A DNA stretch of 44,948 nucleotides from Octopus bimaculoides (Eukaryota): contig NC_068985.1 in assembly GCF_001194135.2 (NCBI RefSeq), positions 124,273,563 to 124,318,510 of the forward strand. The letters run 5' to 3'. Below the pieces are notes generated by a model. That model saw only the letters and a list, made by a program, of their open reading frames with translations, made no database searches and was not told the origin of the DNA. The stretch's first letter is position 1. Each line of letters opens with the position of its first letter. A program made the translations under genes and the position numbers. Positions 30,431 to 32,543 of this stretch are shown one piece after another.

Positions 30431-30833
30431 TAATAATCGTAAATTAGTCGGGGTATACCTCTTCGAAGATAGTTCACTTGAACCGTCACCCACTTACACA
30501 CAACATCATCTTCGCCTTGATACTGGAGTTAGGCTCTGTTGCAGGGCTTGAGTTGCTCTTTGGTCTAAGAATTCGTTCGATAACTTATTCCCTTCCTTTC
30601 GCCTGTCTTGAGAGCTCTTGGGGGAAGGGATGGACATAGCCCTTTCTCGTATGATTTAAACCATTATATATATATTTTACTGCAATGGTTTTTGTTAAGC
30701 AGCGTCGAGTTTTACAATTCTGTAAATAATAATAATAGTATCATAAGCTTATAAGCAATCACCGCGCAATGATTAATGAAAATAGTCTAATAATGGGGCA
30801 TATAAGCCCTCGACAGAAAAAAGGTAGGCTTTA

Positions 30834-30905
30834 CCGTACGTGTGGGACTCGAACCCACACTTATTCGTTTTCGCGACAAGAATGCTACCATTAAACTAGC
30901 GCACA
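30834..30905 (-). pseudogene. tRNA-like cloverleaf (72 nt), probable pseudogene, identity undetermined
   Basis: TGTGCGC TA GTTT AATGGTA GCAT T CTTGT CGCGAAA ACGAA TAAGT GTGGG TTCGAGT CCCAC ACGTACG G; canonical B box; T6 terminator at 30817-30822. Confidence 0.7.
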
Positions 30906-31029
30906 ACTTGCTTCATTCCGTCAGATTTAAGAACCATAATTAGTTCGTAGTGTTGTTTTGTAAACAAACTTTCATGTGCTTTTACTGCGATGGTTTTTGT
31001 TAAGCAGCGCCAGTTTTTACAATTCTGTA

Positions 31030-31081
<52 letters not shown>

Positions 31082-31185
31082 GTATTTTATAAGCCTAAAG
31101 CTTATAAGCGATCACCGTGCAATGATTAAAGAAAATCGTCTAATAATGGAGCATATAAGCCCTCAACGGAAAAAAGTAGGTTTTC

Positions 31186-31446
31186 CCGTGCGCGTGGGAC
31201 CCGAACCCACACCTCATTGTTTTCGTGACAAGAATCTTTTCTACTCTAGGCACAAGGCCCAAAATTCTGGGGGAGGGGACCAACCAATTAGTTTGACCCC
31301 AGTACGCAACTGATACTTATTTTACTGACCCTGAAAGGATGAAAGGCAAAGCTGATGTCGGCGGAGTTTGAACTCAAAACAGACGAAATGACAAACGAAA
31401 TACCGCTAAGCATTTGACGAGAATACTATCATTACACTAGCGCACA
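31186..31446 (-). pseudogene. tRNA-like cloverleaf split by a SINE insertion
   Basis: Same cloverleaf (loop CACGAAA, T arm GTGGG TTCGGGT CCCAC, T6 at 31170-31175); interrupted at 31236-31414. Confidence 0.7.
31236..31414 (-). mobile_element. 5'-truncated family C SINE with 10-bp TSD
   Basis: B box GAGTTCAAACTCC on minus strand and family C body; flanked by TGACAAGAAT (31226-31235) and TGACGAGAAT (31415-31424). Confidence 0.9.
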
Positions 31447-31731
31447 GTCTGCTTCACTTCGTCAGATTTAAGAACTATAATTAGTTCGTAGTGTTGTTTT
31501 TGTAAACAAACTTTAATGTGCTTATATGCCCCATTATTAAACTATTTTCTTTAATCATTGCGCGGTGATCGCTTATAAGCTTTAAGCCTATAAAATACTA
31601 TTATTATTAGTTACAGAATTGTAAAAATTGAAGCTGCTCAACAAAAACCAGTAAAGGCACATGAAAGTTTGTTTACAAAAACAGCACTACCAACTAATTA
31701 TAGTTCTTAAGTCTAACGAAATAAAGCAGCT

Positions 31732-31803
31732 TGTGCGCTAGTGTAATGGCAGCATTCTCGTTGCGAAAACACAGAGGTGTGGGTTCGGGTCCCACGCGTA
31801 CGG
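31732..31803 (+). pseudogene. tRNA-like cloverleaf (72 nt), probable pseudogene
   Basis: TGTGCGC TA GTGT AATGGCA GCAT T CTCGT TGCGAAA ACACA GAGGT GTGGG TTCGGGT CCCAC GCGTACG G; T8 at 31814-31821; anticodon stem poorly paired. Confidence 0.65.
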
Positions 31804-32543
31804 CCAAGACTACTTTTTTTTCCCGGTGAGGGCTTATATTCCCCATTATTAAACTATTTCCTTTAGTCATTGTGCGGTGATCGCTTATAAGCTTCACGTT
31901 TATAAAATACTATTATATGTGTGTGTGTGTATGTGTATGTGTGTGTGTAACAACTTCATGGAACTAGAGGAAAATGTGGTATTCACAGTTCTTCACGGGT
32001 TAGCGAGCCAATAAGAAAGCAGTGTCTTAGACACTCAATAGCACTATAAACGGAAATAAACAAGGTTTATGCATCCTTTTTCCTCGACAACCCAGCCAAG
32101 CAAGATGTCCAGTTTTTCTTTTTGTCTAAATTTCAGTTGCAGCTAACAAACTATGGAATCGATCGTTGCCAACTTTTGTCTAGGTTAGCTTTATTAGGTG
32201 ACAAGTTTAACCTGAACTACACACTAGTCTGCCGTATCTTTATTCTGTCAGTATTTTAACTTATCAATATTTTCCATTAATACGACACGCGAAACCAAAT
32301 GAACTTTATTTCAAGAACAAAATCCTAACACAACTCCAACATATTTAGCTCAATCTTTTTTTAAGGAGGTCATCATGGAAAACAGTTACTTTTCTCTGTA
32401 TGAATTGCTGCATCCCACAAGCTTGTAATCACGGACTAAAACAAGCAATCCGTACTTTTCAAAAAGACTTTCTGATAGTGGCACTTACGCTGATAGATTA
32501 CTATATTTCTAGTGATACACAGAAAATAAAGAGCAATCAAATA

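What the first reader, a model, noticed from the sequence alone, without database searches (positions are those of the whole stretch)
30675..31916. Tandem and inverted array of a tRNA-like Pol III unit, amplified as DNA rather than as a SINE
Seen: a ~305-bp unit occurs as A and B (direct) facing C and D (inverted). A, B and D each hold a 72-nt cloverleaf with A box, B box, invariant T stem GTGGG/CCCAC, an oligo-T run about 10 nt downstream and TAATTAT about 30-37 nt upstream. Similarity extends 74 bp upstream of the cloverleaf and about 160 bp past the terminator. Established: retroposed SINEs begin at the Pol III start and would not carry these flanks. Inference: this is a DNA-level amplification of a tRNA gene or tRNA-like ncRNA cassette, now partly decayed, possibly a fragment of a larger dispersed or satellite family.
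Basis: partly seen in the sequence, partly recalled or inferred. Interest (0 to 1): 0.78.

Follow-up and report, generated by a model that had tools for sequence, protein, structure and literature searches.

The report
Decaying cluster of duplicated tRNA pseudogenes
This is a small local cluster of copies of one tRNA-derived pseudogene, duplicated together with its flanking DNA, once in tandem and once in inverted order; it is now decaying and one copy is split by a SINE, which is an ordinary feature of a repeat-rich animal genome.

Summary
The repeat is real and lies at the stated coordinates. A unit of about 305 bp occurs as A and B (minus sense), facing a partial C and a D (plus sense). There are no other copies in the window.

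- B's cloverleaf is split by a 180-nt 5'-truncated SINE with a 9-bp target-site duplication.
- C is spacer only.
- D's anticodon stem has collapsed.

Only copy A is called by ARAGORN in the window. It scores 23.5 bits on Rfam tRNA, below the gathering score of 29. All copies lack U33, and the called "anticodon" differs between copies. The cloverleaf varies as much as its flanks (15/72 against 29/160 variable columns, p=0.72), and no pair shows a compensatory change.

Duplication as DNA rather than retroposition is supported. The flanks are shared, the units join head to tail, and a T6-T8 terminator lies 10-11 nt past the cloverleaf. The inversion junction shows GCTT microhomology.

Pol III activity and the size of the family in the genome could not be tested.

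Verdict: an ordinary tRNA-pseudogene (tDNA) cluster, of low interest.

The parts
30675..30979 (-). Unit A, complete (upstream 74 nt, cloverleaf, trailer, T6, about 140-nt spacer)
   Evidence: Direct and inverted repeat families
30834..30905 (-). tRNA-like cloverleaf A, the best preserved copy. It has A-box TAGTTTAATGG and B-box GGTTCGAGTCC, but its anticodon loop CGCGAAA has no U33, and it carries the mismatches C7.A65, U12.C22 and C26.A42.
   Evidence: ARAGORN 'Ser-cga'; Rfam tRNA 23.5 bits, below gathering score 29; pair counts
30817..30822 (-). T6 run (Pol III terminator motif) 11 nt after cloverleaf A
   Evidence: Sequence
30936..30942 (-). TAATTAT at -31 to -37 of cloverleaf A (also at 31477-31483 for B and 31695-31701 for D)
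   Evidence: Sequence; alignment
30980..31519 (-). Unit B, lengthened by an (AAT)17 microsatellite (31030-31081) and interrupted by a SINE
31186..31235 (-). Cloverleaf B, positions 23-72 (3' part); T6 run at 31170-31175
   Evidence: Alignment with A and D
31236..31415 (-). Inserted 5'-truncated tRNA-derived SINE, in the same sense as unit B
   Evidence: Related copies at 10424-10502, 10574-10651, 15191-15257, 17227-17283 and 18760-18790
31227..31235 (-). Target-site duplication, copy 1 (ATTCTTGTC in RNA sense)
   Evidence: 8 of 9 identical to 31416-31424, directly flanking the insert
31416..31424 (-). Target-site duplication, copy 2 (ATTCTCGTC in RNA sense)
31425..31446 (-). Cloverleaf B, positions 1-22 (5' part), followed by B's upstream region 31447-31519
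   Evidence: 88% direct repeat of 30875-30959 (family D3)
31516..31523 (.). Inversion junction (31519/31520). B's upstream region meets C's spacer at a shared GCTT.
   Evidence: Both parental continuations read G.GCTT
31520..31650 (+). Partial unit C: downstream spacer only, with no cloverleaf, terminator or upstream region
   Evidence: 92% identical to B's spacer and 90% to A's and D's
31651..31916 (+). Unit D: upstream region, cloverleaf, T8 and spacer, cut short at a (TG)n microsatellite
31732..31803 (+). tRNA-like cloverleaf D. Acceptor, D arm and T arm are kept; the anticodon stem is reduced to 2 of 5 pairs. T8 run at 31814-31821.
   Evidence: No ARAGORN call at default settings and no Rfam tRNA match at E up to 10

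Best explanation
The locus is a local cluster of one tRNA-derived pseudogene, a homogeneous tDNA cluster.

History (inferred):
- An ancestral cassette of about 305 bp held about 75 nt of upstream sequence with a TATA-like TAATTAT, a 72-nt tRNA-like body with internal A and B boxes, a 10-nt trailer, an oligo-T stop, and an AT-rich spacer with an (AAT)n microsatellite.
- The cassette was copied as DNA, at least once in tandem (A, B) and once in inverted order (C, D).
- The inverted copy probably arose by a microhomology-mediated template switch at GCTT.
- The ancestor already lacked U33, so it was not a decoding tRNA when it was duplicated.

Since duplication (shown):
- The copies have drifted to 85-92% identity, with the cloverleaf changing as fast as the flanks.
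- Methyl-CpG-type transitions have eroded the CpG-rich anticodon arm.
- A SINE has split copy B.
- Microsatellites have grown inside the array and at its edges.

Possible activity (inferred, untested): copy A, and perhaps D, still has a plausible type-2 Pol III promoter and a terminator. It could give a short RNA of about 85-90 nt that RNase P and RNase Z might trim, because the acceptor and T arms are intact. Nothing suggests that such an RNA is under selection.
For: - Repeat map and coordinates.
- Identity by segment: upstream 88-90%, cloverleaf 85-87%, spacer up to 92%.
- Variable columns: cloverleaf 15/72 against flanks 29/160, Fisher p=0.72. The anticodon arm has 8/20 variable columns and holds 4 of the 9 inferred ancestral CpGs.
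- No compensatory pair in 21. The anticodon helix is 67% paired; the T stem never varies.
- Rfam tRNA matches copy A only, at 23.5 bits against a gathering score of 29. Nothing in the window reaches a gathering score.
- ARAGORN gives Ser-cga for A, Asp-gtc for B with the SINE removed, and nothing for D at default settings (Phe or Arg when relaxed).
- The minimum-free-energy folds keep only the acceptor and T arms, with z-scores of -0.9 to -2.2.
- The SINE insert has a 9-bp duplication and dispersed relatives in the window.
- Clusters of tRNA genes and pseudogenes within 1 kb, in parallel or opposite orientation and with rapid turnover, are common across eukaryotes (PMC2888827).
Against: - Only three cloverleaf copies exist, so the rate comparison has little power.
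- Outside the anticodon arm the cloverleaf has 7/52 variable columns against 18% in the flanks. That is lower but not significant (p=0.53), so weak constraint on the promoter, acceptor or T arm is not excluded.
- Five of nine inferred CpGs, including the one in the B box, survive in all copies.
- Copy number in the genome is unknown.
Confidence: 0.65

Rival explanations
1. The locus is an eroded outlier of a much larger family spread through the genome. That family would be a tRNA-like Pol III gene family or a tDNA-derived satellite, amplified as DNA and possibly maintained for a tRNA-like non-coding RNA.
For: - A and B boxes, the terminator and the -31 to -37 TAATTAT are kept in all three copies.
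- The acceptor and T arms are nearly invariant.
- The array ends in microsatellites rather than at clean unit boundaries, so it could once have been longer.
Against: - No other copy lies in 45 kb.
- At most two units stand in tandem, and the copies are 8-15% diverged with no sign of homogenisation.
- The cloverleaf is not slower than the flanks, and there is no compensatory change.
- One copy was left disrupted by a SINE.
- No relative was found in any searchable collection. Those collections hold little animal DNA, so this is weak evidence.
Confidence: 0.2
2. [quoted passage not shown] That would make it a TRIMp3 or 'Helenus' element, a kind known to form tandem LTR-internal-LTR arrays.
For: - Helenus elements carry a tRNA-like sequence inside LTRs.
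- They occur in molluscs (bivalves) and other animals.
- Tandem arrays of one such family have been seen (PMC10886601).
Against: - No division into LTR and internal part is visible in the 305-bp period.
- My visual check of the sequence, with no host tRNA set to compare against, found no convincing primer-binding site (TGG plus a tRNA 3' complement) next to a CA terminus.
- No 4-5-bp target duplication lies at the array ends. The two outer ends fall at different unit positions, inside microsatellites.
- The T6-T8 run would stop a Pol III transcript long before a full element was copied.
Confidence: 0.04
3. The inverted half (C, D) is an assembly chimera. In that case only a simple tandem cluster exists in the real genome.
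For: - The window comes from a gapped draft assembly with 9 runs of N that is very rich in microsatellites.
- The junction could not be checked against reads.
Against: - C and D differ from A and B by 8-25%, so they are not misplaced duplicates of the same sequence.
- The junction lies in unique sequence with a clean GCTT microhomology, not at a gap or a microsatellite.
Confidence: 0.05
4. One or more copies are functional tRNA genes, for example tRNA-Ser(CGA) as ARAGORN labels copy A.
For: - ARAGORN calls A.
- A and B boxes and the terminator are present.
Against: - Copy A scores below the Rfam gathering score.
- Position 33 is G or A, not U, in every copy.
- There is no long variable arm, which a tRNA-Ser needs.
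- The anticodon call changes from copy to copy.
- Several stem mismatches are present.
Confidence: 0.02

Closest known systems
Homogeneous tDNA clusters (tRNA genes and pseudogenes less than 1 kb apart), as surveyed across 74 eukaryotic genomes (PMC2888827)
   Same: - Several copies of one tRNA-related sequence lie within 1.2 kb, in both parallel and head-to-head orientation.
- They were made by local duplication and turn over like unconstrained DNA.
   Different: - Here every copy is a pseudogene without a decoding anticodon loop.
- The shared flanks and the breakpoint microhomology show the duplication mechanism directly.
- No intact parent tRNA gene was found in the window.
Tandemly repeated Pol III gene arrays (Xenopus 3.18-kb tDNA repeat, Entamoeba tRNA arrays, 5S rDNA arrays); comparison from my own knowledge
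   Same: - A short unit holds an internal-promoter Pol III gene and a spacer.
- The unit is repeated head to tail as DNA.
   Different: - Those arrays have tens to thousands of homogenised, functional copies.
- This locus has two tandem units plus an inverted pair, 8-15% diverged and degenerate.
tRNA-derived SINEs, including the family that inserted into copy B
   Same: Both have a tRNA-derived head with A and B boxes.
   Different: - The unit has a terminator 10-11 nt after the head.
- It has no tRNA-unrelated body within the transcript, no LINE-type or A-rich tail, and no target duplications.
- Its copies share upstream DNA.
- The real SINE in the locus, by contrast, is 5'-truncated, has a 9-bp target duplication, and has dispersed relatives.
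TRIMp3 elements (Helenus, Cassandra, Ajax): LTR retrotransposons with a small-RNA gene in the LTR (PMC10886601)
   Same: - A tRNA-like sequence is embedded in a repeated unit of a few hundred bp.
- Such units can stand in tandem.
   Different: No LTR termini, primer-binding site, polypurine tract or target duplications were found here.

Membership tests
Canonical cytosolic tRNA gene | Covariance-model score at or above the curated threshold | tested here: not met
   Rfam RF00005 gives 23.5 bits against gathering score 29 for A. There is no match for D, and B is split.
Canonical cytosolic tRNA gene | 7-nt anticodon loop with U33 and one consistent anticodon and isotype | tested here: not met
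   The loops are CGCGAAA, CACGAAA and TGCGAAA. ARAGORN labels are Ser-cga, Asp-gtc, and none (Phe or Arg when relaxed). There is no long variable arm for Ser.
Canonical cytosolic tRNA gene | Four helices maintained, with compensatory changes between paralogues | tested here: not met
   No compensatory pair in 21. The anticodon helix is 67% paired, and D keeps 2 of 5 pairs.
Type-2 Pol III transcription unit | A box, B box at tRNA spacing, and an oligo-T terminator | tested here: met
   Motifs only: TAGTKTAATGG at positions 8-18, GGTTCGRGTCC at 50-60, and T6-T8 at +10 to +11. B's promoter is split by 189 nt of insert plus duplication.
Type-2 Pol III transcription unit | Actual transcription or Pol III/TFIIIC occupancy | not testable with these tools
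tRNA-derived SINE | The transcript runs from the tRNA head through a body to a LINE-derived or A-rich tail; each copy is flanked by target duplications | tested here: not met
   A T6-T8 stop lies 10-11 nt after the head. There are no tails and no duplications at unit borders, and A and B join head to tail.
tRNA-derived SINE | Many dispersed copies | tested here: inconclusive
   There is none elsewhere in the 45-kb window. The source genome could not be searched.
tDNA cluster made by segmental or tandem duplication | Adjacent related tDNAs less than 1 kb apart that share flanking sequence | tested here: met
   Three cloverleaf remnants lie within 1.0 kb. The flanks are 87-92% identical.
Satellite DNA | Long head-to-tail arrays of homogenised units | tested here: not met
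   At most 2 units stand in tandem, and divergence is 8-15%. Genome-wide abundance is not testable.
TRIMp3 / Helenus LTR element | TG...CA LTR termini, primer-binding site, polypurine tract, 4-5-bp target duplication | tested here: not met
   Reading by eye shows none at the unit borders or at the array ends. A primer-binding-site match could not be tested rigorously without the host's tRNA set.
Foldback or MITE-type DNA transposon | Defined terminal inverted repeats with flanking target duplication | tested here: not met
   The arms are unequal (845 against 397 nt). The outer ends fall at different unit positions. The flanks are (AT)n and (TG)n, with no duplication.

The most novel reading that the evidence does not exclude
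The cassette is one locus of a lineage-specific tRNA-like Pol III gene family that spreads as DNA. Alternatively, the head-to-head arrangement acts as a unit. Its central arms (31417-31526 and 31652-31761, 87% complementary) fold into a hairpin stem of about 110 bp (-154.5 kcal/mol, z = -16). If transcribed through, this hairpin could feed a small-RNA pathway, and the intact B boxes could bind TFIIIC as a chromatin boundary.
Probability: 0.07. Interest if true: 0.5.

Novelty: new member of a known kind. Interest (0 to 1): 0.15.

Why it matters
It matters little beyond annotation.
- The ARAGORN call 'tRNA-Ser(CGA)' at 30833-30906 should not be counted as a tRNA gene.
- The locus is a tidy worked example of how tDNA clusters arise and die: tandem duplication, then a microhomology-mediated inverted duplication, CpG decay, a dated SINE hit, and microsatellite growth.
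- It would matter more only if the unit proved to be a large or expressed family in the source genome.

Tried and rejected
Searches that found nothing:
Read support, expression and organism identity could therefore not be obtained, and read laying was not used.
- I looked for paralogues through a pseudo-ORF that spans unit D. The protein word search found no candidate and the exact look-up found none. A second window ORF was also not on record.
- DNA pattern scans gave 0 hits. I scanned the conserved spacer motif in metagenome contigs, and the pair of acceptor/A-box and T-arm motifs in metagenome, prokaryote-genome and viral contigs.
- A literature search for exact sequence strings of the unit and of the SINE gave 0 papers.
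- I did not run the search of protein representatives. The word search had already shown that not even the window's own ORF is in that protein collection.

Readings I rejected:
- The Rfam sub-threshold 'MIR5048' match (31425-31753, 34.9 bits against 160) is a by-product of the inverted repeat.
- A conserved structure in the spacer: RNAalifold finds only invariant pairs, with a covariation term of +0.06.
- The whole unit as one structured RNA: z = -1.65.
- SINE, TRIMp3, foldback-element and functional-tRNA readings: see the membership tests.
- A nuclear copy of mitochondrial DNA. This is my own judgement: the canonical GGTTCGA T loop is unlike metazoan mitochondrial tRNAs.

Full report
**Context.** The window is eukaryotic draft sequence.
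- It has nine runs of N and 63 tandem-repeat rows, mostly microsatellites.
- It holds a (TAACCC)n run at 43688-43807.
- It has no convincing coding ORF apart from a reverse-transcriptase fragment (RVT_1, E = 3e-6).
- No RNA family reaches its Rfam gathering score anywhere in the window.
- From memory, the SINE family in the window resembles octopus SINEs.

**Observation.** The repeated block spans exactly 30675-31916. I realigned all pieces in RNA sense. The map is:

| Piece | Coordinates | Sense | Content |
|---|---|---|---|
| A | 30675-30979 | minus | complete unit |
| B | 30980-31519 | minus | unit with an (AAT)17 expansion and a SINE insert |
| C | 31520-31650 | plus | downstream spacer only |
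| D | 31651-31916 | plus | unit cut short at a (TG)n tract |

- A 28-nt spacer motif occurs four times against 0.00 expected.
- No further copy lies in the 45-kb window.

- B's cloverleaf is not intact. Positions 23-72 lie at 31186-31235 and positions 1-22 at 31425-31446.
- Between them sit 180 nt (31236-31415), flanked by the 9-bp duplication ATTCTTGTC/ATTCTCGTC.
- The insert aligns with five other elements in the window. They share a tRNA-derived head, a conserved core and the same 3' end. It is therefore a 5'-truncated SINE that landed in the anticodon arm after the duplication.
- The SINE's 3' end (…CTTGTGCCTAGAGTAGAAAAG) abuts B's 3' half.
- The stretch 31416-31519 belongs to B, not to an inverted C.

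**Is it a tRNA?**
- ARAGORN calls only A in the window.
- Rfam's tRNA model matches only A, at 23.5 bits against a gathering score of 29.
- On the isolated copies, ARAGORN gives Ser-cga for A and Asp-gtc for SINE-excised B. It gives nothing for D at default settings, and Phe or Arg when relaxed.
- All copies read G or A at position 33, where tRNAs have U. The 4-5-nt variable region is incompatible with tRNA-Ser.
- On the canonical cloverleaf, 89% of cells pair, but no pair shows a compensatory change. The anticodon helix is 67% paired, and D keeps 2 of 5 pairs.
- Minimum-free-energy folds keep only the acceptor and T arms, with z-scores of -0.9 to -2.2.
- The sequence is clearly tRNA-derived. 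It keeps T8, A14, G18G19, T54-C56, C61 and a 7-bp acceptor stem. The common ancestor of the copies was already not a decoding tRNA.

**Selection.**

| Comparison | Result | Source |
|---|---|---|
| Pairwise identity, cloverleaf | 85-87% | |
| Pairwise identity, upstream region | 88-90% | |
| Pairwise identity, spacer | up to 92% | |
| Variable columns, cloverleaf against flanks | 15/72 against 29/160, Fisher p = 0.72 | |
| Variable columns, anticodon arm | 8/20, p = 0.036 | |
| Variable columns, rest of cloverleaf | 7/52, p = 0.53 | |

- The anticodon arm carries four of the nine inferred ancestral CpGs, and most of its changes are CpG to TpG or CpA.
- With three copies the power is low.
- There is no evidence that the cloverleaf is protected.

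**Mechanism of amplification.** The copies share about 75 nt upstream and about 140 nt downstream of the cloverleaf, and A and B join head to tail with no tail or target duplication. In a tandem array, however, 'upstream flank' and 'tail of the previous unit' cannot be told apart. The decisive argument against a SINE is therefore the strong oligo-T stop right after the cloverleaf, which would exclude the spacer from any Pol III transcript. The inverted half joins at 31519/31520. There both parental sequences read G.GCTT, as expected for a microhomology-mediated template switch. The real SINE inside B gives an internal contrast. It shows 5' truncation, a 9-bp target duplication and dispersed relatives.

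**Rivals.**
[quoted passage not shown] I considered it. I see no LTR termini, primer-binding site, polypurine tract or target duplication, and the two outer ends of the array fall at different unit positions, inside microsatellites.
- A foldback transposon fails for the same reasons.
- An assembly chimera is unlikely, because C and D differ from A and B by 8-25% and the junction lies in unique sequence. It could not be checked against reads.
- A larger family in the genome remains open. Every route to related sequence failed, but those collections hold little animal DNA.

**Comparison with what is known.** Clusters of tRNA genes and pseudogenes within 1 kb are widespread in eukaryotes. They occur in parallel or opposite orientation and turn over at roughly the rate of unconstrained DNA (PMC2888827). 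This locus fits that kind. It is a homogeneous cluster made only of pseudogenes, and its duplication mechanism is unusually legible. It is not a satellite, having at most two tandem units and no homogenisation. It is not a SINE.

**Residual novelty.** The central arms form a hairpin stem of about 110 bp if transcribed through (-154.5 kcal/mol, z = -16). The same paper notes that head-to-head tDNAs could seed small RNAs. Copy A keeps a full promoter and terminator motif set. Both ideas are untested, and I give them about 7%.

**Verdict.** DNA-level duplication is supported. Function as a Pol III ncRNA cassette is unsupported, and the sequence evidence points to neutral decay. The feature is ordinary and of low interest.

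Noticed in passing
window 10330-10800; also 15191-15257, 17227-17283, 18760-18790: There are copies of the same tRNA-derived SINE family that split unit B. They share the core ...GAGTTCAAATTCYGCCGAGGTCGACTTTGCCTTTCATCCTTTC...GATAAAATAAGTACCAGTTG... Two copies at 10330-10560 (-) and 10540-10800 (+) stand head to head and overlap at their 5' ends.
   Followed up: partly
window 30283-30345 (+): A further tRNA-like fragment with a B-box-like GGTTCGATCCC lies about 330 bp left of the array. 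It is unrelated in sequence to the unit and is not called by ARAGORN or Rfam. It is probably a remnant of a SINE head.
   Followed up: no
window 38292-39714 (-): This is a degenerate non-LTR retrotransposon. An ORF fragment at 38292-38633 matches reverse transcriptase RVT_1 (E = 3e-6, 27.4 bits against cut-off 29.6). Neighbouring open frames to 39714 look, by eye, like the upstream part of a LINE ORF2.
   Followed up: partly
window 43688-43807: An interstitial telomere-like array, (TAACCC) x 19.5 at 74% matches.
   Followed up: no
window 12619-13443: A long (ATC/CAT)n tract with a higher-order period of 199 bp (3.1 copies, 85% matches). It produces spurious long ORFs on both strands.
   Followed up: no
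window 31425-31753 (+): A sub-threshold Rfam 'MIR5048' match (34.9 bits against gathering score 160). It is an artefact of the inverted repeat between B's and D's upstream regions, not a microRNA gene.
   Followed up: yes
window 21125-21309 and 10996-11103: Two minisatellites: a 20-bp unit TCTATCTACCCATCGATATA x 7.4 (also scored with 40-bp and 60-bp periods), and a 41-bp unit x 2.7.
   Followed up: no
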